Of a stretch of 64,000 nucleotides of DNA, positions 5,011-35,962 are shown in pieces; positions within the stretch are counted from its first letter, which is position 1, and every line of letters starts with the position of its first letter. The translations under genes were made by a program, and so were the position numbers. Location of the stretch: assembly GCF_006345805.1 (NCBI RefSeq), contig NC_043005.1, forward strand, positions 2,728,001 through 2,792,000, in the 5' to 3' direction. The notes beneath the pieces were generated by a model. The model worked only from the letters and a program-made list of their open reading frames with translations. It ran no database searches and was not told where the DNA came from. The DNA comes from Octopus sinensis. Its lineage: Eukaryota.

Positions 5011-5019
5011 AACTATGTT

Positions 5020-5071
<52 letters not shown>

Positions 5072-7680: not shown

Positions 7681-8288
7681 TTAGGAACTGAATGAAGCAT
7701 ACACAATACAAATGACTTTTTTCCAAGTTAAAGGAATAAAAATAATAATCGTCACTTCTGAATGATGTTTGTTTCGTAATTAAATTGGGGGAAATTCATG
7801 TTTTTCATTTGTTTACTGTAACTGATAATTTAAAAATCAAGATAAACGTGGGGGGTGGGGAGGCACCAGAAAGATCACTGTAAACAGAGAACATACATGT
7901 TTTTTTTTGTTTTCTCTTTTTTTTTCATAAAATAAATAATTCTTACAAACAAATCAACTAAAAGTAAGAAAAAAGTTATGTTTAATATTGGTTTCTATGT
8001 ATGTATAAAAATGTTACAATTCAGAGACAATATACATACATACATATCGACTTACATTATACATTCTACAGTTTAATGTAAGCAGTGATAACAACAACAA
8101 ATAAACAAAAAACTATTCTTAGAAAAATATTTTTTCGTTTTTTTTTTCAATTTATGAATTTTATTTGCTATTTTTGTATATTTGTCTTGATTTATTTACA
8201 TTTTTTAAAAAATTATTCTTTTAACTTTCTTTGTGGAGGAGGGCAATGGAGGTAAATAGATAAAAAAAAAAAAAAGATGGTGACGTAC

Positions 8289-8376
8289 CTTTAAAAAGCA
8301 TTGAGGCCTTACTGTCTTTGGTTGAAGGGTTCTCTTGGAGGGCAGGCACAAGTTGGCGCAGAGTTTCAAAGCCTCT
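8289..8376 (-). CDS. bHLH gene exon encoding helix1-loop-helix2 start (RGFETLRQLVPALQENPSTKDSKASMLFK)
   Basis: Acceptor atgtttcAG|AGA and donor AAAG|GTACGT; 88 bp, phase 0-1. Continues the basic-region exon in frame and matches the xGFxxLxxLVP...SKAxxL pattern of Mlx/Max-family bHLH-ZIP proteins. Confidence 0.9.
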
Positions 8377-8759
8377 CTGAAACATCAGCATAACCAGATA
8401 GAGACAGGGTGGATCGACAAACAGTGCAATGACCCAGAACAACAACAACAACAATAACATCATCATCATCATCATCATCACAAACCAAAACAAATCTTTG
8501 GGAAATGTACTAGCAATGGAATTGGTCATGCAGGCATTACATGGTGATGGTCATGTTGGGAGGAGAGAGGTGTTTTTATTTGCAACAAAGAACAATGCTT
8601 CCATATACAGTAATTACTCGCCATGTCACGGTTCACCGATCATGTAAGTGTGAGAATCTGAGAGAGAATATTTACTCAAAGCCAGGAATTTTTTGAATCC
8701 AGGTGAAAAAATCACAGGTAAAAAGTCATGGTAATAAAGGCACAGGGGTTCTGTGATCG

Positions 8760-8920
8760 TCACATTGATCACAACAGAGAAAGTTGCCATAGCAATACCT
8801 GCTCAATGGCCTACACAGAGATGCAAAAAGTGTATGGAGGGGAGCGTAGGAGGTGCACACAAGTGTGCGAGTGGTTCACACGTTTCTAAGAGGCCACAAA
8901 AATGCCAATATTGACGAATA
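8760..8920 (+). mobile_element. Mariner transposase N-terminal fragment
   Basis: Reads TEMQKVYGG...TQVCEWFTRF, similar to the mariner HTH-region motif xxxxVYG...xxVxEWFxRF. Confidence 0.45.
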
Positions 8921-9002
8921 TTTTGGTACACACACACACACATTTCTCAGACAAGAAGACTAATCTGGCACCAATTAAATAGACTTACTGGTATTGCGTT
9001 TC

Positions 9003-9146
9003 GACTTTGCCTTTCATCCTTTCGGGGTCGATAAATTAAGTACCAGTTACGCACTGGGGTCGATGTAATCGACTTAATACCTATATCTGTCCTTGTTTGT
9101 TCCCCTCTGTGTTTAGCCCCTTGTGGGTAATAAAGAAATAGAAATA
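9003..9146 (+). mobile_element. 5'-truncated family B SINE with 13-bp target-site duplication
   Basis: Flanked by GGTATTGCGTTTC at 8990-9002 and 9147-9159. Confidence 0.8.
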
Positions 9147-9150
9147 GGTA

Positions 9151-10887
9151 TTGCGTTTCCCCAAAATAAGACCCAGTCAAAAGTGCATTAGCTTGTTAAC
9201 AAGACCATGTGCTGTTTGCAAAAGGAACCAATTACTGCAGCTCAGTTAAAGTCTGCAATAAGCACATTGAGTTGACTCCTTTGGCTTGACCCCCACCTCT
9301 TGGCTTGACCCCACCTCTTGGCTTGACCCCCCTCTTGGCTTGACCCCACCTCTTGGCTTGACCCCCCTCTTGGCTTGACCCCCCTCTTGGCTTGACTTCC
9401 TTGTCCCCCAGTAAAGATGAGTACAAAAAGAGAGAATTATTCCATGGAGTACAAGAAGAGTCACATAACAAGAATCTTCAGCTTTCTGTAAGGAGATGTT
9501 GGATCTCCGAATGATTCAAAGATGGTGAGCAGAGTACGATAATCTCAGCAGACAAATGGACGAAGGAAGTGCTAAGAAGCACAAGCATGGATCCGGTCGA
9601 CAACCGTTATTTTTGGAGCTGGAAGATGTCACTTCGGGATGGATTGCTGACAGAAGGACAAAGGCTTTGGTTGTACATAGGGCTGATATTCAAGAATTTG
9701 CTCTTACAATAGCACCACAGTTGGATATACCACCAGAGATATTCAAAGCATCACCTCATTGGTTGGATAACTTCCTTCAGCGATACGAGTTCTCTCTAAG
9801 AAGATCAACAACACTGTTCAAAGTGGAGGATGCTGAAGTGATTCAACGTGCACTTGCATTCAAGTCCTTCGTTGAGGGCATTGAATTTTCTAAATACAAT
9901 CTCTCTAATATAATTGCTATGGATGAAACCTCAGTATTTATGGGCCAAGGATCCAAATCGACAGTTGAACAGACAGGTGCCTTGTCAATCTACACTGCCT
10001 CAATGGGTTACGTAAGTTCAAGAGTTACTTGTATTTTAGCAATTCCTCTTGATGGAACGGAAGTCCCACCTCTTATCATCGCAAAGAGTAAAACAGAGGA
10101 AACAGAATGAGTTTTGGGCATATATGTCCTTGAAACGGAAAAGGGTTGGTGCACAGAAGTTGTTATAAGAAAATGGGTTGATTTAACTATGCCACTTGTT
10201 TTACATGGTTCTCAAAGAGGTCTTTTAGTCTGGGATTCAGCCACTGCTCATCACGCAAAAGATATGAAAACCTTCATTTCTGAAAGAAGAATTGACCACA
10301 CAATGATTCTCGTGGGAATGACTCCATATCTACACACGTTAGATCTTGTAATAAACAAGCCCTTCAAGGATTATTTGCCGATGGAAGTGAATGAATATGT
10401 CGAATATAGAACCGAGAAAAATCAGCGTGGTAACTTTGTCAAATGCAACCTCCAAGAAGTCGTGAATTGGGTGAAGAATTCATGGAATAAACTTACCGAC
10501 AGTTGTGTTGCCAATGCATTATGAGCAGGGTACTTGGACAAAAAGTGTTCATTTAAGGAAAGTTATATTGCCAAACATGAGAGATTGGGGTCCATGATTC
10601 TACAGGAAATGGTTTTGCAAGAAATTCAGGGTTTCGATGATTTGTGACGATGTTCCAGAAGAGGATGAAATGTTTGTACTTGACTAAAAACAATAAACAA
10701 ATAAATAAACTTTTGATAACTAAAAACATGGGTTTCCTTTTTACAATTTTTTCCTTTTACACAAGGACATGAGACCTCTTTGTCTTTCTTGGATTTTTTC
10801 CACAAAAATAAGACATCCCCTGAAAATAATCCCTTTCTTAGATGCAGAATTGATATATGACCAGATCTTATTTTTGGGGAAACACAG
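9151..10887 (+). mobile_element. pogo/Tigger-family DNA transposon, near full length, inactivated
   Basis: TIRs TTGCGTTTCCCCAAAATAAGA and TCTTATTTTTGGGGAAACACAG with flanking TA; CENP-B-type HTH plus DDE_1 with MDET, WDS and LDLVINKPFK; in-frame TGA stops. Confidence 0.92.
9281..9397. repeat. 17-18 bp minisatellite GGCTTGACCCC(A)CCTCTT, about 7 copies
   Basis: Directly visible tandem array inside the pogo 5' non-coding region. Confidence 0.95.
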
Positions 10888-10969
10888 TAGATCAGCACTA
10901 GGAAATATTTCTTAGGTAGAAACACATGAGAGCGAATAGGGGTGGGGCAGGTTTGCTTCAAAGATAGGC

Positions 10970-11166
10970 ATTCACTGCCCGTCTGGCTCCTGTGCCAGTG
11001 GCACATTAAAGCACCCACTAAACTCTTGGAGCGGTTGGCGTTAGGAAGGGTATCTAGCTGTAGAAACCGTGCTTGGCACAGCCTTCTGGCTCACCAGTCC
11101 TCAGTCAAACCGTCCAACCCCTGCCAGCATGGAAAGCGGATGTTAGATGACGATGATGATGATGAT
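10970..11166 (+). mobile_element. SINE-like family A copy
   Basis: Same body and (GAT)n tail. Confidence 0.8.
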
Positions 11167-11852
11167 TTTGAACAAAAAGTAATGTAAAAGAAATAAAATG
11201 ACTGAGAAACAATATTTAAAGAAAAAAATAAAAGAAAAAGCAACAAGTCCTGGTTTTGTTGGGGAAGAAGACATTTGTTGAGTGAAGCGGATTCCATGTG
11301 ATCCTGGAAAGGAAAATGGCAAATGCAAAGGGAGTCGGAGGGGGAAATGTATTGAAAGGGGAAGAATAGGAGAGAGGAGGGGGGAGGGGGATGAGGAGGA
11401 GGGGAGCGAGAAGACAGACAGACAGACAAAGAAAGAAAGAAAGAGAAATTGTGAGTGCAGGTGGGAAAAGAACATATGGCATGGAATGGCATGGATGGCA
11501 GGACCTGCAAAAAGAAAAGGACTGGTTGTTAAGAGAAGGTTAGTGGTGGTGGTGGTGGTAGTTGTAGTAGTAGTAGTAGTAGTAGTAGTATAGTAGTAGT
11601 AGTAGTAGTAGGTACGTTAGTGTGTATGTGTGTGTGCTTTTGTATTTATGTGTTTGTTGTCACTGATGTTGCTTAGCTCCTAATCAATGAAACCAACGAT
11701 CAAAGACGTTCCACTCATGACCATCACATGTTAATCTATCAAAAAATAAACTGTCCCAACATGTCCCTCCCCTTTCAGAGAGGATAGGGAGATTGGCTTG
11801 CTATTTCTAGCAGACCAGGCAACCACATAGACAATCCCTGGTTTTGTGTGCT

Positions 11853-11888
<36 letters not shown>

Positions 11889-12276
11889 TGGAAGAAAGAG
11901 AGAGGGGGAGGAAAGAGAGAGAGAGAGAGCGGGAGAGAGACCTAATTCAAGCAGGGTTATGATCATGGATACTCCATCCATGACTTCCTCACCTTTTTCT
12001 GTTTTACACAATTTTTTTGTGTCCTTTGTTTATTAAGACAAAAAAATGTGAAGTGAGGGAGATCTAGCTGCTCTTTCAAGCAAACTGAGTCTCTCCTACA
12101 TTCGCTCCTAAAGTGAAGTGTCTGAATGTGGTGTGTAATATATGAGTAATGTGTGTGTGCATGTGTGTGTGTGTGTGATGTACAAGTAGTATATGTGTGC
12201 GTATGTGTGTTTGTGCGTGTATGTGTTTCTCTATGTATGTGACAGTGAATAGTGAGTTGTGTTTGTGATGTGTATG

Positions 12277-12324
<48 letters not shown>

Positions 12325-13149
12325 TAATGCAAGTGTGGGGGGTTAGGGGGTCAGGGAGTGTATAGAGGGTTGTTTTCTGTGCTACAGTGGATGTGTTAAG
12401 TCTCTATGCTATGTGTATTCACACACACACACACACACACACACAGCCAGCTCCCCTTTTATACATCCAATGTCATTAAATGTGGTTGTCATGACGGGTG
12501 GAGGGGGGGTCCCACTCTAACTCACCCCCACCCCCTCACCCCACCCCACACACATTTCACAGTTGCTGTCCTTCAATTCTATTCACATCCAATCTTGATA
12601 GTCTGAAATCCCAGGACCTTTTTGAAAAGAAGACAGGAAAAGGAGGGAACCTTTATCAAGGAAGTAAGGGGAGATGAAAGGGGAGATGAAAGGGGGTAGT
12701 GAAAGACTGCAGTATTTAAAGTGTGTCTGGTTGATATGGTTTTAGGTGTATATAGACAGTGAAGTTGGTGGTGGTGGTCGTGGCAGCTTGTTGTCAAGTG
12801 ACTGCTCAAGTGGAGGTCAGAGTGAATGTGGGACACAGATTGTGTAAGCCACAGGAATGTGTCTGTCCCATTCGCAAAAGTGTGTGGGGGGGAAGGGCGA
12901 TTGGGGAGGGAGGACTGTCTGCCAATGACAGTCTCTCCTAAGGATTGTCTCTCTACAAACAGTATCTCAAAATAACTTCAATCTCTTCAAGGTGTCAGCA
13001 GTGAATCTGCTAAACTACAGCAACACCTCCCCCCCCCCCTCTGACACCCCCCCACCATCATCACTATAACAACCGATGCCCCATTCATCCCTCAACACCA
13101 TCATCATCAGCAGCAGCAGCATCACCGCCATTTCCATCTTTTTCACTTG

Positions 13150-13510
13150 TTTCAGTTGTTAGGCTATGGCCATGCTGGGGCACCGTCTCAAAGAACTTTT
13201 AGTCAAACGAACCAACCCCAGCGTGTTTTTTTTCTTTTTAAGCCTGGTACTTTTTCTATCGATCTCTCTTGCCAAACTGCTAAGTTATGAGAACATAAAC
13301 ACACCAACACCAGTTGCCAAGTAGTGGAGGGAGGGGTCAAAGACAGACACAAAGACACACACATACATACAACAGGCTTCTTTCAGTTTCCATCGACCAA
13401 ATCTACTCACAAAGCTTTGGTCAACTCATTGCCCAAGGTACCACGCAGTGGGACTGAACCCGGAACTGTGTGGCTGGGAAGCAAACCTCTTACTACACAC
13501 CCACACCTGC
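13150..13510 (-). mobile_element. tRNA-derived CORE-like SINE family C
   Basis: Reverse of the GGCTGTGTGGTAAGAAG...GGTTCAGTCCCACTGCGTGGCACCTTGGGCAA head/core and the GGTGC(T)CCAGCATGGCC tail. Confidence 0.8.
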
Positions 13511-15489
13511 ACCACACACTTACACACCACCACCACCGCTGCCGCCACTCATTTATGCTTCTCTCGGAGACCAAGTTCTCATCCTCAGACAAAACCAGTG
13601 AATATTTTTCAGTCCAGAAAGCAAGGAAAATGTCGAGGTTCCATTTGAAGAGAAAACCAATCTGAGAGTTTAGGAAAGACTTTGGTAGGTTGAAACCTTC
13701 CATCACCTCTGACCCTATTTTATTGAGCCCTGTAGGGTTGATTACCAACAGAAACTAAATCCTATTTAAAAGGTATTTAGCTGGGATCCTCTCTGTTTCC
13801 CAACCAACAGGAAAACCTCTACAGCTGTCATGGATAATCCTTTGGCTCATGGGACTTTCTGACAAAATGCATGAAACATCATCTTGAATTCTTTGCGTCC
13901 ACCTGATGATGAGTCATGTCTCATGCAGCCAACTTCTTTCTATAAAGTTACTTGACCTGCTAGAAATAGCAACCAAATCTTCTTCAAACCACATGTTTCA
14001 GTCTTCGAAAGGAATATGTCGTACAATGAGGTCTTGAGTTCCCTGCATATAATGGTTGGAGGAACTTTCAGCATCGGTCTACTTGACTGGAGCTAATCGA
14101 AATCAAAACTAACAATTGAAACCTCAAAAAAAAAAAGGGAACAAAAACCACACAAACCACCCCTAAAAAGGGCAACATCAACAATAAATAAGCTACAAAC
14201 ATAAACACAAACATATCAGAAACATTAATAGCTTCATTAGACCATAAATTAGTGTCTCGTTAATTAAGTAAAGTAATTAGTCTCTCATGAATAACATCAT
14301 TAGACCAAGATACTGTAACGGTGGCGGGGGAGATGCACCATTAATGGAACAGCCGTTATAAAAAATAATAATTGGCAAGAGATGCTCTGGCAGAATAAAC
14401 TCTACTGCAGTAAGTTCTCAGGAAAGGATCGCTCTTACTGGCTTTTAGTGCAGAATGCAGGCTTGTTTGTTTATATTACAAGCAGGGAGATAACTCCTCA
14501 CCAACTCCAGTGACAAAGCCACCACATCACATGATTTCAATCTTCCTTGATCTCATCAGTGATGGACGCTCGACAGTGAGGGATAGCAGCGACTCACCTT
14601 CACGCTAGGGATATACAGAAAATCCATTCCTGACCAGGCACTGGTGTTGCGATTCGTGACAGAAGCAGTATTGATATTGAGAAGGAATATTTATCTCCAC
14701 ATAAACGTGGATGTTCCGTTAGAACAGACTTTACTGTGATAGCAGCCATGAGAGAACCTCATTTGTATCACTAGCAGCAATGAGATAAACTTTGCACCAA
14801 AAGCCAAGATGAGAGATTCTCTCAGGGTTATTGCTGCAGTATGGTCTGTTCTAACAGAACATTTCAAGTTTCAGTGAGGATAAATATTAGCAACTGTTAT
14901 GTTCTAACTGACTAAGTCCACCTTGGTAGCATTGGAGAAGTACATGTTTAATGTACCCCATTAAGCACCAGATTTTGGGGTGGGTCACAAAGCCACCACC
15001 ATACACTGCAGAAATAGACTGGACATGTGGTCTTTTAGTAAATTAATTTGGTATCTAAAAGACCACAATAAACAATTTAATTTAGATTGCTTGATTCTCT
15101 CATTTTCAATACCTTATGATAAAGGCAAGGAATTCTGTCTTCTCTGAAATTCTGAGTTATTTTTCATGATTTTTTCAAAAAATCCCCTCGTAAACACAGT
15201 TATAGAGAGAGCATACCAATGTAAACATTGGCAAAAACACACATTTAGTGCATATAAGTAATCTCTATCATTATATATAATTTAAACATTAATTTTTTTC
15301 TTCTTACATTTCACATTCACAAGATATATCTTTTTCCAAGACTTTAGGGTTTTATTTAATTTACATATCGTTATATACTTCTCATTTATTTCACAACCTG
15401 AACCACAAGTAATACAGCTCCTAACTTACCTGTAATCAACTCAACACATATTACCTGACAATATGTGGCTGACACACAATGCTTAGCAA

Positions 15490-15830
15490 ACGGGGGAGAA
15501 TGCTGAGCAGAATTTAGTCTGTCTTTATGGTCTGAGTTGAACTTTGCCTTTCATCCTTTTGGGATTGATAAAATAAGTACCAGTTGCATACTGGGGTCAA
15601 TATAATTGACTCCCCCACCCCCAAACTTGCTGTCCTTCTGCCAATATATTCTTTTCTATTCTAGGCACAAGGCCCAAAATTTGGGGGGAAGGGGTCAGTC
15701 AATTAGATTGACCCCAGTATGCAACTGGTACTTAATTCATAGACCCCCGAAAGGATGAAAGGCAAAGTCAACCTCAACAGAATTTGAACTCAGAACGTAA
15801 AGACAGGTGAAATACCACTAACGATTCTAC
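15490..15830. mobile_element. Two family B SINEs tail-to-tail (inverted pair)
   Basis: About 15538-15612 is reverse-complementary to about 15698-15772. Confidence 0.8.
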
Positions 15831-16007
15831 CAGCTCACCACCTTCTTGTGCCAATACATTAATATATCAATGGTAAAACATATGGAAGAATTTGTCTCCA
15901 AACTCCAATGTTTTCAGATCCAACCAGATTCTCTGGCCACCAAACTCAGATTTTTCACCCAGCATGCATCATCTTTTAACTTTATTATTATACACCAACA
16001 TCACTTC

Positions 16008-16277
16008 ATTGGCACCTGCGTCGGTGGCACGTGTAAAAAGATTTGAGCGAGGTCATTGCCAGTACCACCTGACTGGCCCCCATGCAGGTGGCACGTAAAA
16101 AGCACCCACTACACTCTTGGAGTGGTTGACGTTATGAAGGGCATCCAGCTGTAGAAACTCTGCCAGATCAAGACTGGAGCCAGGTGCAGCCATCTGGTTG
16201 CCAGCCCTCAGTCAAAACCGTCCAACCCATGCTAGCATGGAAGGCGGACGTTAAGCGATGATGATGATGATGATGAC
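16008..16277 (+). mobile_element. SINE-like family A copy
   Basis: Same body and (GAT)n tail. Confidence 0.85.
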
Positions 16278-16771
16278 ACCAATATCAAAGTCATTTGGAC
16301 CCAACACAACTGCTCCTTAAATTATGTTTTAACACCTCACTTTAAATTAAACCACTTCGCTTGCCCTTATTTTTGCTAATGAACAACATTTATACTTCCA
16401 TGTAAACAGAGACTTCAAAGTCACTCTCAACCTTTTCCTTGTAAAAATTGAATAAATATGATCCCCTACTCAAAAGTGCTGAGCAATCTTTGAACTTAAA
16501 TGTTAAATTGTTTTTGTATCCAACCTGACATTAACCCTTTCAATACCAACCCGGCTGAAGCTGCCTCTGGCTCTCTAGGACAAATGTCTTGTTTCCATAA
16601 GTTTTGAATTAAAATCTTCCACCAAACAATTTATGTTCTTAACACTAGCTAAATGATAACCAAGTTATTTTACTAGATTCTTTGTTATATTTAAAATTAA
16701 TTGAAAGAAACAGAGAGAATCTCAACAGAAATATGGTAACGAAAGGGTTAAAAGAAATAATAAATGTGTGC

Positions 16772-16805
<34 letters not shown>

Positions 16806-17099
16806 GTATATGTATGTATGTATGTCTGTCTGTATGAATGTACGTCTGTCTGTCTGTATGAATGTATGCATGAGAAAGTAAATAAAAAAAGCGTATTGTT
16901 ATTTAAAACAGACGGGAAAAAAAGAAATCAAGAAAAGATTAGAGGAATCCCTAAATTGAAGCCCAGCATAAGTTTAACGACAACAACAACAACAACAACA
17001 GCAACAGCAACTGTCCCCTTCAGCTGCCATTATGTAGAATGGTGAGGGATAAAGGAAAAGGCTAACACATTTCAGTGCTTCCTGTGTTAGAAAACAAAC

Positions 17100-17252
17100 C
17101 TGGATTTTATTCCTCCTCCTGTGTTCGGCATTGATATGAGAGACTCTTTTATGGCGAGGAAGTGGGTTCGTTTGTCGTCCAGGTTTCTTACCATTCTTAG
17201 GTTCTGGTGACGGTGTGGGGGAAGATAAAGAGTCAGTGTTAGACAGAATCAT
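17100..17252 (-). CDS. bHLH gene exon encoding the basic region (MILSNTDS...PRHKRVSHINAEHRRRNKIQ)
   Basis: Acceptor tgtgtatttttcAG|ATG and donor CAG|GTTTGT; 153 bp, phase 0-0. HxxxExxRR is the group-B bHLH basic-region pattern. Confidence 0.9.
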
Positions 17253-19744
17253 CTGAAAAATACACAGAAAATCACTATTATTCACCTGTGATGCTAAAAA
17301 AAACACATGCAAATGAGAATATTGGCAGATCTCTTATCATTATTAGTTATAGGACAATTTTGGTAGCTACAACATGATGGGAATGGACTTGACAACAACC
17401 TTGGCCACCACCTTTTTGAATTTCATGTCTAACACTCTCCTGAACCTGCTTACAGAATCAAAACACAAAACACAGCACCCGTGACTTTCAGAAACAATTT
17501 TCAGACTCAGAATTGCTGAAGCATGGAATAAATTACCCACATCAGTTGTCAGCTGTCAGCTGACACTGCATCCTTCAAAACTTGCTTCCTGAAATCTGCC
17601 AACAAATACACCTGATGCCCCCTGTTTTTTGGGGTTTTTTTTAAACAATTCATTCACTGTTCCCTTCCTGTGCATTACTCTGTGTCTTCAGCATAAACGT
17701 TTCGCTACCTTTTCTGATGTGTTGTATGGCACCTGAGCACTGCAAACAATCACTTCACAATTATTACAGATATTACAATATTGAGTGAACATTGTATTAT
17801 CTCTTTTAATCTGTCTGCAGAAAGAAAAAAGTTTTTTTATTATAAACAAGTACTGTCTACAAGTAGTGAAACTCACAGCTTGTTGCCTGGTTCTCAGCCA
17901 GAGATTTTCATGTTAAGGTCTCAGTGAGTAGATCCCTTATTTTATGACCATACCAAACCTGTGAAGTTAGTTAGGTCATCTGAGGATATTAATTACAATA
18001 ATCCAGCTTTGATCAAACTTGACCAAGGTGAGTCAACAACAATAACCTGCCAAGTTTCTAGTTCCATATCACATCAAATGAAATGACAAACAGTTACCAT
18101 GGGAACATGAACTGGCTGGAACTGAAGTCATCATTATCACCGTGAGAGAGAAAATCATTTTGGCTCAGAACAGTCAATCAGAACCTTTTGTAACGAAGAC
18201 ACCTTAATCACTGAATGACATTTTGCAAACAAAAAAAAACAAAAATAGATTATCTCTTTTAATCAAACAGAAACTAATTTTTTCAAGTTGTTTATGAATC
18301 CATATCTTTTTATACTGTCCCATGTCTTTTCAGATATTTGCATGGGCTAATGCCCCCGTCAGGTGAAGGATCTCATCACAGGCTGATGAGACCTGCTACT
18401 GACACCATGTAAACATGTTTCCTGGTTGAATGGTCAGCAACTGGTGCCCCCTACTTAAATGGCTTACTCCACTTGTGAGGAGGGTGTCTGGACAAGCAGT
18501 AAGATTGAAAACAAGATTTGTCAAAGGGCACGTGAGCTCCTTGTTGGCCGACAGCCATCCAGTTGGGGAATGCAATGGCAAATCCCCATAATATCTCTGC
18601 CAAGTAAACACTATGAGAAAGTCAGAACAAAGTCACTTTTGCTGTAGTGTCATCAACACATTGCAAAAAGTGCCCCTGGGTTCAGTTTTGTAGAAATTTC
18701 TAAAACAAAATTATATTGGAGACATCATCAGTCATGCTTCTGCTCACTTCTAACACAATGTCCTTCAATATAGAGACATTTGTGTGGACTAGTGCCCTTT
18801 GTGTTAAATTTCTTAAGAAGGCAAAGGCTTTTGTAATGAAATTATATTGGACCTTGGTATAACATCAAAGTCATGTTTCTCTTCACTGATAACACAATGC
18901 CATAGGTTTTATTCAAAAATGTGTTTAAAATAGAATTATTGTTCATGGTTTAGGACATTTTATTTCTAAAACCACACCCTCTCCTCCAAACACCTCACCC
19001 CCACAGCACCTCCTAGACACATGTCACCTTCTCAAGAGTCCCCAAGGTCTCACACAGGGCACAACCACTCAGGTTACCTTCCAACGATTTAGACCCACTT
19101 ATGACACTCTGCTTCATGGCATTAAAATGGTGATCCTTGCAGGGAAGGAGCAACTACCATTAAACATTTTCACTCCATATTATTTAAGCAAGATATCTTA
19201 ATTCACAGAATCCATCTTCAAAGTGGTGATGAAAGCAGAAACTAAACTCAACATTGCAGGTTAATCAAATATTCTTCAGACTCAGATTTCTGTCATTGCT
19301 TAGCAACAAGCTTTTTCCCATTGGCTAAACTCAAGACACAATGCTGGCATCTTGGCTTTGAGATATCCCGTCTCCTCAATTATTAGCCATCTATACTAAG
19401 GTACGCAATAACCAATGACAAGGTCTAGATTCTACATCTCCCATGTATGACCTTGTTTCCTAAGGCAGGACACAGTCTCTCATGTGCCTCTAACATGTCT
19501 TACAAGTGTTTTTATTACCAACACCAAGCACCTACATCTTACGATTCTCTATTGTTCTGTAGGTTCTTTTAGTTTCCTTTAGAAACTTGAAGAAAAGTAA
19601 TGCTGAAAATAGTAAATGTTCAAAGCCCACCTCTTTTATTTAGGATTAACTAAAAGACTTTTCCAGGTGGTGCTACTGAGTTAGTCATGGCCAAAACCAA
19701 TTTAAGTTATCTAAGTTATATATATATATATTTAAGGACAGCAT

Positions 19745-20270
19745 AAGGACTACTATGAAGTCACTGGAAAACCGTTGCTTCGGATCGAGTTGGATGGCGA
19801 ACAAAGGTGTGGAGTGGAGTGAAAGCATTTGAAGAGGCCAGGATAACACAAGTAAGACTCAAAAGAGGTCCAAGGAAGAATGTTACGATCGAGACGGTGA
19901 ATCACGATGACCTTTTTGTTCTGCACAGTTTGTGACAGACCATGTCTTTCTTTTGTGCTGGGCTCAGATCTCATTTGCGAACCCATGGAAAACGAACCTC
20001 CACCAACTATTCTGCCTATATGTCTGTGCACACCTTTGAATGCAAGGTATGCCTGAAGGTTTGCAAATCTAACGGAGGCCTCAAAAGACATTTTAAGATC
20101 CACAAAGAGCAGAACTTATCTGCAGCTTTTGGGGGTCCAAATCAGAGGTGCAAACGACGTGGGTGTCTTTTCAGGACACTGTCTGGTTTAAAGAGCCACA
20201 TCAGATGCCATTATGGTGCTAAGGTGTAGATGAAGGAGGTGGTCAGACTCTGCATAAGGAGTAGACAACC

Positions 20271-20275
<5 letters not shown>
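19745..20275 (+). mobile_element. 3' end of an RTE-type LINE with C-terminal C2H2 fingers
   Basis: WKTVASDRVGWRTKVWSGVKAFEEAR (RTE C-terminal pattern), then CTVCDRPC..GLRSHLRTH, CKVCLKVCKSNGGLKRHFKIH and CKRRGCLFRTLSGLKSHIRCH; flanked by (TA)n. Confidence 0.75.
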
Positions 20276-20306
<31 letters not shown>

Positions 20307-21353
20307 CCGAAATGTATAGTATTAAATATCCATCATGGCTGGTCTTACCAATCAGTTTCGTGTAAAGACTACAATGGAGTGTTAGGTAACAAACCAATCA
20401 TATAACTTTACGCTCATCAGAGTCAGCTGATCACCATGGAAAGGAATGTGGTGACTGCTCTCTCAGTGAATATATTTTATACAATCATCATTTTAACGTC
20501 TGCTCTTCCATGCTTGCATGTGTCAGACAGAATTTGTTGAAGCAGATTCTCTCTTGCTGGATGTCCTTCCAGTCACCAGCCCTTAACTGCTTCCAAACAA
20601 GGAAATATTTTCCCAGGGGTGGCCAGACATGGCTTGGCAGAAGATTGGAAAGGAATATTGATTTACAGCAATCACTTGATATCAAGATAAGGAGAAACAA
20701 ACATTTACAAATACACATAGATATATACAATGGACTTCTTCAGCTTCCATCTACCAAATCCATTAACAAAACTTTGGTCTGCCTGAGGCTAGGGTAGAAA
20801 AGAGACACCCACCCAGGGTACCCGGCAGTGAGACTGAACCCAAAATCATTTGATTGAGAGGGAAATTTAACTATGGAAATGGTAAAAATTGAAAGCTGAT
20901 GGCTAACAACTTTGCTATTCTCCCATAAATTTGTTAAATGTTTTCTAATGTTGCAGTCAGGTCCAGTTAAGTGTGGTCGGGGTCACGCACCATTGCAGTG
21001 TGTTGCTGCATTCACCATTTGTTGGTATATTCCCAGGTTGTCTTAGGCAACCTAGCCAGTCCCCACCTCTGTGAGATACCTCCTCAACTGCTGTGACTAT
21101 ATGGCATGTGGTTGACCAGCTGTCAACCAAGCCAGACCCTCAGTGAAGAGAATACAATAAGTAGGGTCTAACTCAGAAAACTCAAGCAACATGACCAAAC
21201 AGTTCTGGGCCTGGGGGGTGGGGGCTGAATCATACAAGTAACAAGACACGTCCTAGTCTCTAAACAGAATCACTGGTTGGATACAAAATCCAGCCAAGAG
21301 CAACCCATGATCTTGCGAAACATCCTGAGGCTGAAGGAGTTCAGGAAGTTCCC

Positions 21354-21417
21354 AAGGACCCTGGACAGTGTTCCTAAGGACCCTGGACAGTGTTCCTAAG
21401 GACCCTGGACAGTGTTC
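21354..21417. repeat. Perfect 22-bp tandem repeat AAGGACCCTGGACAGTGTTCCT, about 2.9 copies
   Basis: Contiguous units with no spacers. Confidence 0.95.
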
Positions 21418-22174
21418 AGGTCTCACAACTCTTGTGTAATGTTGCAGTTCTGGGTTAAAATTCTTCTGGAGAATATAGTTTTGAGGTGGCTGGGCCCCAG
21501 CAAACTGAGGACATGGAAATGAAAGTTTCAATGATATTCTTAAAATCCATTCAACTTAGGGACCCATCAGCTCCAGATTTGCAAAGATAAATTATCATTG
21601 ATACTAAATATAATGATACACATGACTAAGAAAACAGAGTAAAGAGACAAGAGAGGTCAGAGGTGTGTCTCCAGTCAAGCAACACTGCATTTTATTGTAC
21701 GCTGGACCAGGACACTCAATACTTAAATGATGCAGTCTAGCTGTAATTAAATACCACAAGGTATCAACAACTCACCACTGTAAACAGTAGCAGCATAGTA
21801 AAATTGACAAATGGTTCATAAGTCAGTAGCGTAAAGTTCAATGGTTCTTATGGACTTTGAATAATCTTTGGACTTACTGCAAGAAAACTGCCAACAAGCA
21901 ACCGACTCATAGAACTCTCTGGAACACCTAATTGTTTCAGTCATTAGATTGTGGCCATACTGGGGCACTGCTTTGAGGAATTTTAACCAAATGAATCGGC
22001 CCCCAACTCTTTCTTTTTAAACTTGATACTTTTTCTGTCTCCTTTGCTGAACTGTTAAGTCACAGTGGTGTAAACAACACCAGTTGTCAAGCAGCAGCCA
22101 GGGACAAACGCACAAAGTCACCCACATAACCACCCGCCTACCAACTCACATACTTATATAGATACATAAATATA

Positions 22175-22460
22175 TCATCATCATCGTTTAACGTCCGTTT
22201 TCCATGCTAGCACGGGTTGGACGGTTCGACTGGGGTCTGGGAAGCCAGGAGGCTGCACCAGGCTCCAGTCTGATCTGGCAGGGTTTCTACAGCTGGATGC
22301 CCTTCCTAACGCCAACCACTCCGCGAGCGTAGTGGGTGCTTTTTACGTGCCACCGGCACAGGTGCCAGGGGAGTCTGGCATCGGCCACGATCGGTTGGTG
22401 CTTTTAACGTGCCACCGGCACGGAAGCCAGCCAAGGCGGCGCTGGCATTGGCCACGTTCG
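22175..22460 (-). mobile_element. SINE-like family A copy (inverted partner of 22616-22778)
   Basis: (CAT)n followed by the reverse complement of the family A body. Confidence 0.88.
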
Positions 22461-22466
22461 GATGGG

Positions 22467-22497
<31 letters not shown>

Positions 22498-22615
22498 TAC
22501 ATATATATATATATAGTTAATCCAAACATGAAAACACAACAACGCTAGTACGTGGAACAACTATAGTGTTATTGGACGCTCAGGAAAGGAAAGAAATATA
22601 TATATATATATAAAA

Positions 22616-22778
22616 ACCCACTACACTCACGGAGTGGTAGGCGTTAGGAAGGGCATCTAGCTGTAGAAATACTGCCAGATCAGACTGGAGCCTGGTGCAG
22701 CCTCCTGGCTTCCCAGACCCCAGTCGAACCGTCCAACCCATATTAGCATGGAAAACGGACGTTAAACGATGATGATGA
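22616..22778 (+). mobile_element. 5'-truncated SINE-like family A copy
   Basis: Family A 3' body and (GAT)n tail. Confidence 0.88.
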
Positions 22779-24400
22779 CAACATACATACATACATACAT
22801 GCATGCATGCATACATACATACATACATACAGATGTGAAAAGAATTGAGGGAGGACGAGTAATTCACACACATTATCAAAATCTATTAGGAACCCATTTA
22901 ATATTTTTTCTTTCCCATATCCCTCAGATTCCGACGGTATTGTAATTTACGGTACTATTTAAGAAGGGTGGTCCCGAAATGTATCTCTGGAAAATTTCAT
23001 TTAAAAATATCCACTTTTCAGAAAGTTACGAAGAACGTGACACACATCTGTAGTTAAACAAATCAAGCCATGTCCTTTACGTGTTTAATCCTACATTAAA
23101 TATTTAATAAAAATTATCTTTTTATTTTGGGCAAGAATCCTAATTTTTTTAATATTCTTTATCTTTTTAAATTGGAAATTATAATCCAACTAAAAAGAAT
23201 TTATTTTTCCTCAAAATTTCAGTGTTTCATTCTTTAAACCCCTTTTGTCCTCCTCCATCCCGCAACTTTGCCATTTTAAGCGTTTTTTCTCCCTCGAAAT
23301 TGCGTTGAGAATTGTATTTAAAGTTTGGAGTTGTCGATTATACAAAAATAAATTTTTCCACATTTCTCGATTGATGGCGGGGGAATGTTGAGGCAGATTT
23401 GCAGTCGGTTGGTTCAAGAGAAATTCTTCCGTTAATAAAAGTATTTCATTCTGGGGAACATCAGCATAACCGTACCCTTGAGTCTTATGTTAAACAATTA
23501 TATACCCAGGATGTTTGGCTCTCGAAACTATTCTGAAAACAATTCTTGTCCAAAAGTAGCACTGGATAAGTAATTGCAATATTTCAAGTGGTTAAAAGAA
23601 ATTTATAAAGACCCCATATTCTATCATTTAACTCGAGAAGTTTTGCTAAAATATTTTTTTGAGAAAGAATTCTCTAACTTTTTTTTTCTTCGAAACTCCG
23701 CCTAATTATCAAATTTGTGAAAATTCTAGTTTTGCACAATCTTTTTTTTTTATCCGAAAGAAATCGAAAATGGAAAAATTGCGGGTGTTTAGTACTCTCT
23801 CTCTCTCTCCCTCCCTTAATGCTGAAGTAGCAGGACAAAAACTATGGAATGGGAAATTTTGAAAAAATATCTTTTTTTCTTTTTGACATAACTGCATTCT
23901 CTACTGTTTGAAACATGTAAACTTAAAATAATAAAGAAAAAACAATTTTCAAAAATGAAATGAAGGCAAAATGTTAAAAAAATTATTATTCTTAAAAGTA
24001 ATTTTCGAAAATGTTAGTATGGAAAGACTTCCTCCCGTCCTGGGGCCGAGGGTACAAAAGGAAGTCTTGCTATTATTATAGAATTACTGCCATGTGGCCT
24101 AACTTTAATTTTAAAATAAAACTGTAGTATGTGATTTGAGAGCTATTTCTAGCAAATAGACCCATCACGTAGAAGCCCCCTCCCTGGTTGTGGCAGGTGG
24201 TGGAAGGAACTTCTACCCCCCCCCCCCTACTATTCTCTGATTCACAATTAACTCAAGTTCAAGGTGAATGAACCACTTACTGACGCCACCACAACTGTTA
24301 ACTACTCCTCACACTACCACCATTTACTACTATTACTCCCACCACCTTGTGGTGAGTGCGTGTGTGTAATTCTCGACATTGACATAACTAACGCGTTTTG

Positions 24401-24475
24401 ATTGGCTCAACGGCGATGACGTCACACACTCAGTATATAACTAATTTCTCCGCTGTTTCAAGTTCTTGCCAGTTG
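24401..24475 (+). promoter_or_regulatory. Compact promoter-like module: CCAAT box, CRE, TATA
   Basis: ATTGG at 24401-24405, TGACGTCA at 24417-24424, TATATAA at 24434-24440 in a CpG-enriched patch; ETS-like CCGGAAG about 60 bp downstream. Confidence 0.6.
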
Positions 24476-25310
24476 CGGATTCGTAGAGAGAAGACCTCCG
24501 GAAGAATTGATGGTGTGCACTGGAGTTGTGCCAGTTTAGGAAAAAGTACTTAAAAAGGAAAAACTCCTGGCACAGAGAGAACAGCGCATATTTTTGAAGC
24601 TATACACAAATGATACACCGTTTGAGAAGATAAGTAAAAAAAAAAAAGGATTACAGAAAAAATTATTAACCTTAAAGTAATAAAAAAAAAGAAGAAAATA
24701 ATTATTGATTGCCACATGGACGAATCTCTGTTAATTTTATTTTGTTTTTATAATTAATTAAATTTTCATCTCATATCAAACTACTTTTAATTGTCTGTTA
24801 CGATGTTTTATAACGATTAATAATCATTTCAACTTGTAATTAACTTCTTTACAAACTTTTTCGCTTGAGACATAAAACGTGGACATTAAGCTTTTTTTCC
24901 CCCAATATTATACTCTATGTTGATGTAACATTTCCCTCGAGTTATATATTTGCAGAAATTCCAAAGCAACACGCACCATCAGCATTATTATTAATCATGA
25001 AGGCTGAAATTTTTAAAACGAAGATAAATTGCTTTTTATGGAAAATCTGGCTCTCCTGAAAATAAAGTGAAGCAGTTCCCCACGCAGAATTAATGTAGGT
25101 CGTGGACTCAGAACGTATGCTTCAACAGGATTTCTTACCAAATGTTAAAAGATTTCAAACATTTTCGATCCCACCACTCAGAATTTCTCAATGAAAACTT
25201 TGGGAAAGTTTCAGAGAATGTGGAAGATTAATTGGAGCTGAAAAATGAGTTCCCGAAGATCCCAGCCCTGGAAACTATGATGATGATGATAATGTTTTAT
25301 ATATTGTTAC

Positions 25311-25442
25311 CTTGTTGTCTTGGAGCTGAGGTGAAGTTGAAAAGTCAGTGGCCGCCACTTCAGAGACTGGTTTCTCACTGGTGGTCGTCGTGTTTGGTTG
25401 TTGGGGGAAAAGTGGAAACAACGTCGCCTCTTCTCTTAACAT
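25311..25442 (-). CDS. Probable first coding exon of the Mlx/Mondo-like bHLH gene (MLREEATLFPLFPQQPNTTTTSEKPVSEVAATDFSTSPQLQDNK)
   Basis: ATG at 25442 in GCGATCATGT context, CpG-rich region, donor AAG|GTAACA at 25311, phase 0 and compatible with the exon at 17252. The frame is open upstream to 25787, so the start codon is uncertain. Linkage to the downstream exons is inferred. Confidence 0.6.

Positions 25443-35925: not shown

Positions 35926-35962
<37 letters not shown>

What the first reader, a model, noticed from the sequence alone, without database searches (positions are those of the whole stretch)
8289..25442. Divergent Mlx/Mondo-like bHLH transcription factor hidden in three small exons across 17 kb
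Seen: three phase-compatible minus-strand exons with canonical splice sites assemble KRVSHINAEHRRRNKIQ|RGFETLRQLVPALQENPSTKDSKASMLFK. Known: H..E..R in the basic region marks group-B (CACGTG-binding) bHLHs; Mlx reads AHTQAEQKRRDAIK-RGYDDL and Mondo/ChREBP HISAEQKRRFNIK. Inference: this is closest to Mlx/Mondo but replaces the usual EQKRR with EHRRR and has a short Ser/Thr/Pro-rich N-terminus with no Mondo glucose-sensing region in the exons found. It may be a separate, little-studied member of the Myc/Max/Mlx network. Helix-2/zipper exons were not found in bases 1-8288.
Basis: partly seen in the sequence, partly recalled or inferred. Interest (0 to 1): 0.7.

Follow-up and report, generated by a model that had tools for sequence, protein, structure and literature searches.

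The report
Sensor-less Mondo-like bHLH gene in octopus
The three small exons are real and form the front of a seven-exon octopus gene for a Mondo/ChREBP-type DNA-binding protein that lacks the sugar-sensing half, one member of a barely studied gene family of molluscs and annelids that exists alongside the ordinary Mondo.

Summary
In detail: the three minus-strand exons (25442-25311, 17252-17100, 8376-8289) have canonical splice sites and compatible phases. They encode a 124-aa peptide with a significant HLH match, and all 373 exonic bases are identical to Octopus vulgaris although the window is 2.8% diverged overall.

The gene continues beyond the window. Exon 4 (helix 2 and zipper) lies about 450 nt past base 1. 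Three further exons encode a Mondo-type C-terminal dimerisation domain (DCD) and a long tail, giving 529 aa over about 40 kb. The public O. vulgaris annotation skips exon 4 and splits the gene into two wrong models.

It is neither the ordinary Mondo nor Mlx:
- An octopod has a separate 1350-aa canonical Mondo with the sensor motifs (MCR).
- The window gene belongs to a clade of 44 proteins from molluscs and annelids (70% bootstrap), marked by GRPxNPxPRHKR before the basic region.
- No clade member has MCR motifs, and a relative's transcript has in-frame stops upstream of its ATG.

It most likely pairs with Mlx on CACGTG-type sites without Mondo's glucose gate (inferred). A 2017 bHLH survey probably counted the family as a second "Mlx-family" gene but never characterised it. 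Interest is moderate.

The parts
25311..25442 (-). Exon 1: start codon ATG at 25442-25440 and 44 codons (MLREEATLFPLFPQQPNTTTTSEKPVSEVAATDFSTSPQLQDNK), phase 0 donor AAG|GTAACA. This is the least certain exon, because the frame stays open upstream and there is another in-frame ATG at about 25628.
   Evidence: The O. vulgaris model uses the same start. There are 0 differences in 132 nt against O. vulgaris (P about 0.02 on its own). Similarity to the relative's transcript N-terminus is only weak.
17253..25310 (-). Intron 1 (8058 nt), GT-AG.
17100..17252 (-). Exon 2: 51 codons encoding a Ser/Pro-rich linker, the family signature and the basic region with the start of helix 1. Phase 0 at both ends.
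   Evidence: The chiton exon ends at the same KIQ| boundary. It is 82% identical at nucleotide level to the relative's transcript, and the match stops at the exon end.
17100..17159 (-). Codons for PRHKRVSHINAEHRRRNKIQ: the family-specific PRHKR extension and the basic region carrying His, Glu and Arg at the E-box-reading positions.
8377..17099 (-). Intron 2 (8723 nt), GT-AG. It contains a Tc5/pogo-type transposase remnant on the + strand (9556-10110).
8289..8376 (-). Exon 3: 88 nt encoding RGFETLRQLVPALQENPSTKDSKASMLFK plus one base. This is the rest of helix 1, the loop and the first residues of helix 2. It ends in phase 1.
   Evidence: The chiton exon matches, and the match to the relative's transcript breaks at both exon ends.
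1..8288 (-). The 5' part of intron 3, with a LINE reverse-transcriptase remnant at about 1009-2791. The next exon (helix 2 and zipper) lies about 450 nt beyond window base 1. In O. vulgaris locus L001 it is at 35860-35959.

Best explanation
The three exons are the 5' end of a functional protein-coding gene of an Octopus vulgaris-group octopus.

Shown here:
- The full gene, read from the O. vulgaris locus, has 7 exons over about 40 kb and encodes 529 aa.
- The protein has a short disordered Ser/Pro-rich N-terminus, the motif PGRQTNPLPRHKR, a group-B bHLH-leucine zipper, a Mondo-type C-terminal dimerisation domain (DCD/WMC) and a long low-complexity tail.
- It belongs to a paralogue family of molluscs and annelids that arose by genomic duplication of a Mondo gene. 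The intron positions are shared with canonical Mondo, including a U12-type intron.
- The family lacks the whole N-terminal glucose-sensing module (MCR I-V).
- The family coexists with a canonical full-length Mondo.

Inferred mechanism:
- The protein dimerises through its zipper and DCD with the single Mlx (TF4) of the animal.
- The dimer binds CACGTG-type E-boxes or carbohydrate response elements through His-Glu-Arg in the basic region. The GRP/PRHKR extension may add flanking DNA contacts.
- It regulates transcription without Mondo's glucose-6-phosphate gate. It would be either a constitutive or differently regulated activator, or a competitor of canonical Mondo for Mlx and for sites.
For: Gene reality:
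- Splice sites and phases are correct.
- The HLH match is E=7.4e-10, rising to E=1.2e-12 and full profile length once exon 4 is added.
- There are 0 differences in 373 exonic nt against a 2.8% background.

Full structure:
- tblastn and tblastx against the chiton orthologue reveal exon 4 and three DCD exons.
- The reconstruction reads in frame to the stop of the second annotated model, at L001 50159.
- An assembled transcript from a close relative (464 aa, present in at least 4 sequencing runs) has the same exon order and architecture. It has an in-frame stop 16 codons upstream of its ATG.

Paralogue, not orthologue:
- Argonauta has a 1350-aa MCR-bearing Mondo that matches the octopus protein only over the C-terminal 277 aa (35% identity, E=4e-50).
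- Babylonia has both types.
- The family clade of 44 has 70% NJ bootstrap and Mlx 100%. The family does not group with Mlx.
- HMM scores are 256 (family) > 224 (canonical Mondo) > 50 (Mlx) bits.

No sensor: the MCR HMM gives 0 hits in the window, in four orthologous loci or in 64 family proteins, against 43 of 47 positive controls.

Duplication origin: all four intron positions compared in the bHLHZip-DCD region, including the U12 intron at KFWI|GTATCCTT, are shared with canonical Babylonia Mondo.

Fold: AlphaFold2 on a family member gives confident basic-helix 1, a 46-residue helix 2-zipper and a four-helix DCD.

Partner: TF4 (MLX) is single-copy in all five molluscs surveyed by Bao et al. 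2017 (PMC5381572, Table 1).
Against: - No octopus RNA-seq was available, so the octopus junctions are inferred from splice signals, orthologues and a relative's transcript. This applies most to exon 1 to 2 and exon 3 to 4.
- Annotated products in O. vulgaris and in the chiton all skip exon 4 or stop after it. The full-length isoform is directly supported only in other species (oyster, abalone, the relative's transcript).
- A canonical Mondo was found in Argonauta, not in Octopus itself. Octopus Mlx was not retrieved, because the search was swamped by vertebrates.
- Dimerisation with Mlx, DNA specificity and activator-versus-competitor behaviour are untested inferences from homology.
- The tree is neighbour-joining with a simple distance, and 70% support is moderate.
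Confidence: 0.72

Rival explanations
1. It works as a dominant-negative or competitor. With no sensor and no Mondo activation region, it would soak up Mlx or occupy carbohydrate response elements and dampen canonical Mondo signalling, instead of activating transcription itself.
For: It keeps the bHLHZip and DCD but has lost the N-terminal half, which in Mondo carries both sensing and activation functions (the role of that half is from established knowledge of MondoA/ChREBP). Truncated isoforms are annotated in two species.
Against: The long C-terminal tails in cephalopods and many other family members contain acidic-hydrophobic stretches typical of activation regions. Some family N-termini carry acidic F..DLL..L.E-like motifs. 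There are no functional data either way.
Confidence: 0.25
2. It is the ordinary octopus Mondo (MLXIP/ChREBP) orthologue, and its MCR-encoding exons lie further upstream than the window reaches.
For: Cephalopod genes can be very long: the Argonauta Mondo spans 119 kb. The O. vulgaris annotation calls this gene ChREBP-like. The frame upstream of the exon-1 ATG is open.
Against: - A distinct canonical Mondo exists in an octopod and is only 35% identical to this gene in the shared region.
- The relative's mRNA has in-frame stops upstream of its start codon.
- There is no MCR signal in the 38.5 kb upstream within the window, nor in the chiton, abalone or oyster loci.
- None of the 44 clade members carries MCR motifs.
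Confidence: 0.03
3. It is the octopus Mlx (MLX/TF4/Bigmax) orthologue, which also has a short N-terminus followed by a bHLHZip and a DCD.
For: The overall architecture resembles Mlx (one search shows human MLX, 298 aa).
Against: - The Mlx clade is separate at 100% bootstrap.
- The octopus core scores 50 bits against the Mlx HMM, versus 224 against canonical Mondo and 256 against its own family.
- The DCD motifs NWKFWIFS..RPLF and TSIM.DP are of the Mondo type.
- Bao et al. 2017 list TF4 as a separate single-copy gene in molluscs.
Confidence: 0.02
4. It acts without Mlx, as a homodimer or with another bHLHZip partner such as a paralogue of its own family or canonical Mondo.
For: Gastropods carry three or more family paralogues, some in tandem, which could pair with each other. 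The relative's transcript has changed the DCD motif NWKFW to NVKFL, hinting at a relaxed or altered DCD interface.
Against: The DCD and zipper are otherwise strongly conserved with canonical Mondo. From established knowledge, canonical Mondo needs Mlx to dimerise and enter the nucleus.
Confidence: 0.1
5. It is a decaying pseudogene or an annotation artefact with no function.
For: The public models in octopus and chiton encode truncated proteins.
Against: - Exonic sequence is perfectly conserved against 2.8% background divergence.
- All seven exons are intact and in frame.
- Orthologues are conserved from chitons to bivalves and annelids.
- Transcripts occur in several sequencing runs of a relative.
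Confidence: 0.02

Closest known systems
Mondo family (MondoA/MLXIP, ChREBP/MLXIPL, Drosophila Mondo/Mio)
   Same: - Group-B bHLH-leucine zipper followed by the DCD/WMC domain, 35% identical over 277 aa to octopod Mondo.
- All four intron positions compared in the bHLHZip-DCD region are the same, including a U12-type intron in the DCD.
- By inference, Mlx as partner and CACGTG/ChoRE-type targets.
   Different: - No MCR I-V glucose-sensing module at all.
- Only 82 residues precede the basic-region His, against a median of 735 in canonical Mondo.
- The basic region reads HINAEHRRRNKIQ where canonical Mondo reads H[IT].AEQKRR.NIK, and it is preceded by GRPxNPxPRHKR where canonical Mondo has YKEHRRV.
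- It is a separate gene that coexists with canonical Mondo.
ChREBP-beta (short mammalian ChREBP isoform from an alternative promoter; from my own knowledge)
   Same: A Mondo-type factor that has lost the inhibitory part of the sensor and is therefore thought to act without the normal glucose gate.
   Different: ChREBP-beta is an isoform of the same gene and keeps the activating part of the sensor (MCR V, also called GRACE) and the central region. Here a separate, anciently duplicated gene lacks every MCR.
Mlx (MLX / TF4 / Bigmax)
   Same: Small protein with a short N-terminus, a bHLHZip and a DCD.
   Different: It is a separate clade at 100% bootstrap. The octopus core scores only 50 bits on the Mlx HMM. 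Mlx is the presumed partner, not the orthologue.
'Mlx2' and 'GmlxlHLH' of Bao et al. 2017 (PMC5381572)
   Same: That survey counted two 'Mlx-family' (Mondo-family) bHLH genes in Patella, Lottia, Biomphalaria, Crassostrea, Capitella and Helobdella, plus a gastropod 'Mlx-like' family linked to Mlx2. The species overlap with the family found here (Lottia P0018, Patella P0006 and P0010, Biomphalaria P0058, Capitella P0033).
   Different: They analysed the bHLH domain only, did not discuss the duplication or the missing sensor, and did not include any cephalopod or chiton.
Solved group-B bHLHZip structures (USF2, Pho4, Myc, Max)
   Same: The basic region, helix-loop-helix and zipper align at E=4e-7 to 5e-4. 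The local fold match to bHLH is TM 0.75 on the target.
   Different: None of them has a DCD, and no solved structure matches the DCD by sequence or fold.

Membership tests
Group-B bHLH (CACGTG-type E-box binders) | bHLH domain detectable by profile | tested here: met
   PF00010 matches at E=7.4e-10 on the window peptide. With exon 4 added, E=1.2e-12 and profile positions 1-53 of 53.
Group-B bHLH (CACGTG-type E-box binders) | His, Glu and Arg at basic-region positions 5, 9 and 13 | tested here: met
   In S-H-I-N-A-E-H-R-R-R these are H83, E87 and R91. The rule itself comes from established bHLH classification.
Mondo (MondoA/ChREBP/MLXIP-MLXIPL) | bHLH-leucine zipper of the Mondo/Mlx type | tested here: met
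   35% identity and E=4e-50 to Argonauta Mondo. The core scores 224 bits on the canonical-Mondo HMM against 50 on the Mlx HMM.
Mondo (MondoA/ChREBP/MLXIP-MLXIPL) | C-terminal DCD/WMC domain | tested here: met
   Exons 5-7, outside the window, encode NWKFWIFS..KPLFNSFN...TSIMHDPEKLPEE, aligned throughout with Argonauta Mondo. The domain is predicted as a confident four-helix unit in a family member.
Mondo (MondoA/ChREBP/MLXIP-MLXIPL) | N-terminal Mondo conserved regions I-V (glucose-sensing module) | tested here: not met
   An MCR HMM built from 12 canonical Mondos finds nothing in six-frame translations of the window and loci L001-L004 (best E=0.57) or in 64 family proteins (best E=0.56). It finds 43 of 47 held-out canonical Mondos. 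The relative's mRNA has an in-frame stop upstream of its ATG.
Mondo (MondoA/ChREBP/MLXIP-MLXIPL) | Canonical basic-region signature H[IT].AEQKRR.NIK | tested here: not met
   The octopus reads HINAEHRRRNKIQ. The canonical sequences inspected read AEQ[KR]RR..[IL]K, with rare exceptions such as AEKKRR.
Mondo (MondoA/ChREBP/MLXIP-MLXIPL) | Heterodimerisation with Mlx and glucose-responsive activity | not testable with these tools
   This needs binding and reporter assays.
Mlx (MLX/TF4/Bigmax) | Groups with Mlx sequences | tested here: not met
   The Mlx clade has 300/300 bootstrap support and excludes the octopus gene. The core scores 50 bits on the Mlx HMM.
PRHKR-type short Mondo-like paralogues of molluscs and annelids (family delimited here) | GRPxNP[ILV]PRHKR extension immediately before the basic region | tested here: met
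   The octopus has PGRQTNPLPRHKR. The PRH[KRQ]R/PRYKR/ARHKR core is present in all 44 clade members and in no canonical Mondo, and the GRPxNP part in most members shown.
PRHKR-type short Mondo-like paralogues of molluscs and annelids (family delimited here) | Falls inside the family clade | tested here: met
   NJ bootstrap for the clade is 210/300, and 289/300 for octopus plus its nearest transcript. The family HMM, built without octopus, chiton and P0025, gives the highest score at 256 bits.
PRHKR-type short Mondo-like paralogues of molluscs and annelids (family delimited here) | Identity with 'Mlx2' of Bao et al. 2017 | not testable with these tools
   No supplementary sequences are held for that paper.
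U12-type (minor spliceosome) intron, for the exon 5/6 intron outside the window | Donor /GTATCCTT and branch site TCCTTAAC-like 9-12 nt upstream of the acceptor | tested here: met
   The donor |GTATCCTT follows the last DCD codon of exon 5 (…KFWI in octopus, chiton and abalone; …KFYL in oyster). The branch sites are TTCCTTCAC, TCCTTAAAC, TTCCTTGAC and TCCTTAAAT respectively. Canonical Babylonia Mondo has the same donor and TTCCTTAAC. The consensus itself is from established knowledge.

The most novel reading that the evidence does not exclude
This reading has two parts.

First, molluscs and annelids may run a second, sensor-less branch of the Mondo-Mlx nutrient network.

Second, the output of this gene may be set by an ancient splicing switch.
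- The 100-nt helix 2/zipper exon is frame-shifting when skipped.
- It runs into a TAA stop when its downstream intron is retained.
- In octopus, chiton and oyster it is preceded by a roughly 60-nt intronic element, conserved for more than 500 million years. The element holds a hairpin and a U1-like CCUUACCC that can pair with the exon's own donor.
- The element could toggle between a full bHLHZip-DCD factor and a truncated or degraded product.
Probability: 0.25. Interest if true: 0.65.

Novelty: new variant of a known kind. Interest (0 to 1): 0.48.

Why it matters
The textbook Myc/Max/Mlx network gives invertebrates one Mondo and one Mlx. In that picture, Mondo's defining property is glucose sensing through its N-terminal module.

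This gene shows that a large animal clade keeps additional Mondo-derived factors with the DNA-binding and Mlx-docking parts but no sensor. There are several per genome in gastropods. If they compete with or complement canonical Mondo at Mlx and at carbohydrate response elements, nutrient-responsive transcription in molluscs and annelids is wired differently from flies and vertebrates.

In practical terms:
- The public O. vulgaris gene models for this locus are wrong and can be repaired.
- The chiton models appear to miss the full-length isoform.
- The family can be recognised by a simple signature (GRPxNPxPRHKR).

Tried and rejected
- tblastn of the chiton helix 2/zipper and of the annotated octopus tail against the window found nothing real in bases 1-8288. 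The exon lies outside the window.
- A remembered human ChREBP N-terminus used as an MCR probe gave no hits. I replaced it with a proper HMM built from retrieved sequences.
- Pfam has no MCR or DCD model, so it could not test those features.
- My first motif regexes for the basic region were wrong and were fixed.
- A strict 'PRHKR' set was not monophyletic in NJ. One member has PRHQR, and with it included the clade is recovered.
- The Biopython NJ bootstrap timed out and I replaced it with my own NJ.
- The last protein search, for Mlx, was swamped by vertebrates. It gave an outgroup but no mollusc Mlx.
- A literature search for ChREBP in molluscs was uninformative. There are no papers on a minor intron in MLXIP, and no supplement is held for Bao et al..
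- Locus look-ups failed for Patella P0006, Lingula P0039 and Babylonia P0057. The Argonauta Mondo gene is too long for its DNA to be returned.
- P0171 looked like a possible short isoform but is only a 5'-truncated contig.
I used a family member instead.
- Foldseek against the PDB gave no significant match beyond local bHLH hits.
- I considered that the conserved sequence upstream of exon 4 might be coding. I rejected this because 1-nt indels shift the frame and the oyster copy has a stop.
- I also considered a U12 branch site for intron 3 and rejected it, because the donor is U2-type and the distance to the acceptor is too long.


Full report
**1. The observation**

- Exon 1 is 25442-25311 (132 nt). 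It starts with ATG and has the donor AAG|GTAACA.
- Exon 2 is 17252-17100 (153 nt). Its acceptor is tttttcag| and its donor is CAG|GTTTGT.
- Exon 3 is 8376-8289 (88 nt). Its acceptor is gtttcag| and its donor is AAG|GTACGT, and it ends in phase 1.

The spliced product is 124 aa and contains ...PRHKRVSHINAEHRRRNKIQ|RGFETLRQLVPALQENPSTKDSKASMLFK. Pfam HLH matches at E=7.4e-10, covering profile positions 1-43 of 53. No helix 2/zipper exon is present in bases 1-8288.

**2. Whose genome, and is the sequence constrained?**

The peptide is 100% identical to Octopus vulgaris CAI9728544.1, named 'carbohydrate-responsive element-binding protein-like' (138 aa). The window aligns to that assembly (locus L001 = OX597823.1:1892698-1948024) at 97.2% identity over 36 kb with many indels. 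It is therefore a sibling species or a divergent haplotype of the O. vulgaris group.

All 373 exonic bases are identical between the two, while the 400-nt flanks are 92-99.5% identical. At the background rate, the chance of no difference is about 2e-5. The exons are under purifying selection.

**3. The rest of the gene lies beyond the window**

The chiton Liolophura sinensis has an orthologue, LOC135470757, that is 65% identical over the aligned part of the window peptide. Its isoform X1 ends with a helix 2 and zipper.

Using that sequence as a probe on L001 uncovers an unannotated octopus exon at L001 35860-35959. It encodes (A)SEHCRQLQAESKAQRDEACALRQQLGALTDEIQ (E=1.6e-8). It has a correct phase-1 acceptor and a CA|GTAAGT donor. 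The window ends about 450 nt short of it.

tblastx between the chiton and octopus loci then reveals three more conserved coding blocks. They resolve into:
- exon 5 at L001 45284-45407
- exon 6 at L001 47872-48001
- exon 7 at L001 49297-50159

The seven exons read in frame for 529 aa. They stop exactly at the stop codon of a second O. vulgaris model, the 316-aa 'hypothetical predicted protein' P0023. The public annotation therefore splits one gene into two. Its 138-aa product arises from skipping the 100-nt exon 4 and reading exon 5 out of frame, which gives ENCSCNSPILGWIG*. With exon 4 added, the HLH match becomes full length (positions 1-53 of 53, E=1.2e-12).

An assembled transcript from a close relative independently supports this architecture.
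- It is P0025 (locus L005), 2006 nt long, and it occurs in at least four sequencing runs.
- It encodes 464 aa with the same order of parts: short N-terminus, bHLH, zipper, DCD and a Ser-rich tail.
- Its nucleotide matches to octopus break at the exon 2/3 and 3/4 boundaries.
- Its 407-nt 5' UTR has an in-frame stop 16 codons before the ATG.

**4. What the protein is**

Exons 5-7 encode the Mondo/Mlx-type C-terminal dimerisation domain, with NWKFWIFS..KPLFNSFN...TSIMHDPEKLPEE.

BLASTP against the 1350-aa Mondo of the octopod Argonauta hians (P0048) gives 35% identity over 277 aa (E=4e-50). The match is confined to that protein's C-terminal bHLHZip-DCD.

The PDB holds no homologue of the DCD. Only the bHLHZip part matches solved structures such as USF2, Pho4, Myc and Max.

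AlphaFold2 on a family member (abalone P0008) predicts the following elements, with block-mean pLDDT about 88-98 over helix 1 and the zipper and about 83-92 over the DCD:
- basic-helix 1
- a 46-residue helix 2-zipper
- a four-helix DCD
- a disordered N-terminus

A Foldseek search of that model added nothing significant.

**5. Ordinary Mondo, ordinary Mlx, or something else?**

Profile searches returned many short proteins from molluscs and annelids with the same signature directly before the basic region, (K/R)CGRPxNP[ILV]PRHKRxSH.

*Taxa.* The named sources are:
- chiton
- gastropods: abalones, limpets, Pomacea, Littorina (three genes on one chromosome), Lymnaea, Biomphalaria, Babylonia and Gigantopelta
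- bivalves: Potamilus, Pinctada, Saccostrea, Mactra and Dreissena
- annelids: Owenia, Capitella and Dimorphilus

*Canonical Mondo.* Canonical Mondos read YKEHRRVxH[IT]xAEQKRRxNIK instead, and they carry the bHLH at the end of 800-1350-aa proteins. Canonical Mondos with MCR motifs exist in Argonauta and in Babylonia, and Babylonia has both types.

*Tree.* I built a neighbour-joining tree of the bHLHZip-DCD block (152 sequences, 202 columns).
- The 44 signature-bearing sequences form one clade with 70% bootstrap support (210/300).
- Vertebrate Mlx forms its own clade at 100%.
- The family never joins Mlx.
- Octopus pairs with the P0025 transcript at 96%.

*HMM scores.* Separate HMMs agree.
- The octopus core scores 256 bits on the family model (built without octopus, chiton and P0025), 224 on canonical Mondo and 50 on Mlx.
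- The window-encoded part alone scores 69, 56 and 24 bits.

*Sensor test.* An HMM of the MCR region, built from 12 canonical Mondos including Argonauta, recovers 43 of 47 held-out canonical proteins of 800 aa or more. It finds nothing in:
- six-frame translations of the window, including the 38.5 kb upstream of exon 1
- the octopus, chiton, abalone and oyster loci (best E=0.57)
- 64 family proteins (best E=0.56)

The gene is therefore a Mondo-derived paralogue without the glucose-sensing module. It is not the Mondo orthologue and not Mlx.

**6. Origin**

In its 3' part, the canonical Babylonia Mondo gene shares four intron positions with the family:
- after ...NLK| (the family equivalent is KIQ|)
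- after ...MLQKT| (the family equivalent is MLFK|)
- after the zipper exon
- the U12-type intron at ...KFWI|GTATCCTTT, with branch site TTCCTTAAC 12 nt before the acceptor

The same U12 signals are present in octopus, chiton, abalone and oyster. This points to genomic duplication of a Mondo gene, or of its 3' half, before molluscs and annelids diverged. It argues against retroposition.

**7. How it most likely works (inference)**

- The basic region has His, Glu and Arg at the positions that specify CACGTG-type E-boxes.
- From established knowledge, the zipper plus DCD are the parts through which Mondo binds Mlx and escapes cytoplasmic retention.
- Bao et al. 2017 list TF4 (the true MLX) as single-copy in all five molluscs they surveyed.

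I therefore expect a heterodimer with Mlx that binds E-box or ChoRE-type sites, with activity not gated by glucose-6-phosphate through MCRs. The conserved GRP/PRHKR extension resembles an AT-hook core and may contact flanking DNA.

Whether the protein activates or mainly competes with canonical Mondo for Mlx and sites cannot be decided here. The acidic-hydrophobic stretches in the long tails favour activation.

**8. What was already known**

- The 'core network' view gives invertebrates one Mondo and one Mlx (PMC3177325; PMC7003098).
- Bao et al. 2017 (PMC5381572) tabulate two 'Mlx-family' genes, meaning the Mondo family, in most lophotrochozoans. They also list a gastropod 'Mlx-like' family linked to 'Mlx2'.
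- They worked on the bHLH domain only, did not discuss the duplication, and had no cephalopod in their sample. I could not check their sequences.

The family's existence has therefore probably been catalogued. I found no description of its architecture (Mondo without the sensor), its signature motif, its spread across all major mollusc classes and annelids, or the correct octopus gene model.

**9. Caveats**

- No octopus RNA-seq was available.
- Exon 1 is the weakest part. The frame is open upstream, there is another in-frame ATG at about 25628, and exon 2 starts with its own ATG.
- Canonical Mondo was shown in Argonauta, not in Octopus itself.
- Octopus Mlx was not retrieved.
- The tree is distance-based.

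**10. Side observation on splicing (outside the window)**

Exon 4 is exactly 100 nt in octopus, chiton and oyster. It always ends ...CA|GTAAGT, so retention of the next intron reads CAG-TAA, and skipping the exon shifts the frame.

The truncated public models correspond to exactly these events. The O. vulgaris 138-aa and chiton X2 166-aa products come from skipping. The chiton X1 189-aa product comes from the TAA stop.

About 60 nt of intron directly upstream of exon 4 is conserved across the three mollusc classes, and between octopus and chiton it is more conserved than the exon itself. The element has three parts:
- a hairpin GUCCCCU-(variable loop)-AGGGGRC
- the sequence CCUUACCC
- the sequence UYUGACUYGUCUCCCUMUUGUAG

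RNAalifold recovers the hairpin, with one compensatory pair. It also pairs CUUAC with the exon's own donor GUAAG, which would loop the exon out. Those bases are invariant, so there is no covariation evidence for that pairing.

The element is absent in abalone, where exons 4 and 5 are fused. It is also absent from canonical Babylonia Mondo. This suggests an ancient regulated splicing decision but does not prove one.

Noticed in passing
Outside the window: L001 35785-35984 (about 375-575 nt beyond window base 1); chiton L002 14348-14547; oyster L004 7951-8150: About 60 nt of intron right before the 100-nt helix 2/zipper exon is conserved in octopus, chiton and oyster; between octopus and chiton it is better conserved than the exon itself. 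It holds a hairpin with a variable loop, a U1-like CCUUACCC that can pair with the exon's own GUAAG donor, and a fixed branch/polypyrimidine region. Skipping the exon shifts the frame, and retaining the next intron reads a TAA stop. The element is absent in abalone (exons 4 and 5 fused) and in canonical Mondo.
   Followed up: partly
Outside the window: L001 45408-47871 (intron between exons 5 and 6); also L002, L003, L004, L009: This is a U12-type (minor spliceosome) GT-AG intron. The donor |GTATCCTT follows the last DCD codon of exon 5 (…KFWI; …KFYL in oyster), and a TCCTTAAC-like branch site lies 9-12 nt before the acceptor. It is conserved in octopus, chiton, abalone, oyster and in canonical Babylonia Mondo. 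I found no literature on it.
   Followed up: partly
L001 10001-50159 (O. vulgaris OX597823.1): The public O. vulgaris annotation splits this gene into two wrong models: CAI9728544.1 (138 aa, exon 4 skipped and exon 5 read out of frame) and a 316-aa 'hypothetical predicted protein' (P0023). The chiton models X1 and X2 are also truncated, and no full-length isoform is annotated there.
   Followed up: yes
window 25443-25787 (minus strand): The reading frame of exon 1 stays open for about 115 codons upstream of the annotated ATG and contains another in-frame ATG at about 25628 (MSEACWDL...). The true start codon and transcription start are therefore uncertain. Exon 2 also begins with an ATG.
   Followed up: no
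window 36342-38914 and 58510-59851 (also 63022-63345 and 49505-49821): There are very long (ATGT)n microsatellite arrays of about 650 and about 340 copies. They produce strong GC and AT skew and long spurious ORFs in several frames.
   Followed up: partly
window 46613-48745 (+), 60245-62930 (+), 1009-2791 (-): These are non-LTR retrotransposon copies. One has an intact 710-aa reverse-transcriptase ORF (RVT_1, E=9e-32). One is an endonuclease-plus-RT copy broken into several ORFs. One is an RT remnant inside intron 3 of the bHLH gene.
   Followed up: partly
window 9556-10110 (+): A 184-aa ORF with a Tc5/pogo-type transposase DNA-binding domain (PF03221, E=2e-11) sits inside intron 2, antisense to the gene.
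   Followed up: partly
window 52864-53904 (both strands): Overlapping ORFs of 260 aa (+) and 289 aa (-) lie in the most GC-rich stretch of the window. The 289-aa ORF has no Pfam match, and neither was identified.
   Followed up: no
Related loci and proteins: Littorina KAK7107136/KAK7107137, Pomacea C0Q70_10597/10598, Haliotis, Patella: Gastropods carry three or more family paralogues with distinct basic regions (HINAEHRRRGKIQ, HKRAE.KRR.KIK, PRYKR types). Some are adjacent on the chromosome, which indicates tandem expansion. Only one family member was found for cephalopods.
   Followed up: partly
whole window versus L001: The window is only 97.2% identical to the O. vulgaris reference, with many indels. 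It probably comes from a sibling species of the O. vulgaris complex or a divergent haplotype.
   Followed up: partly
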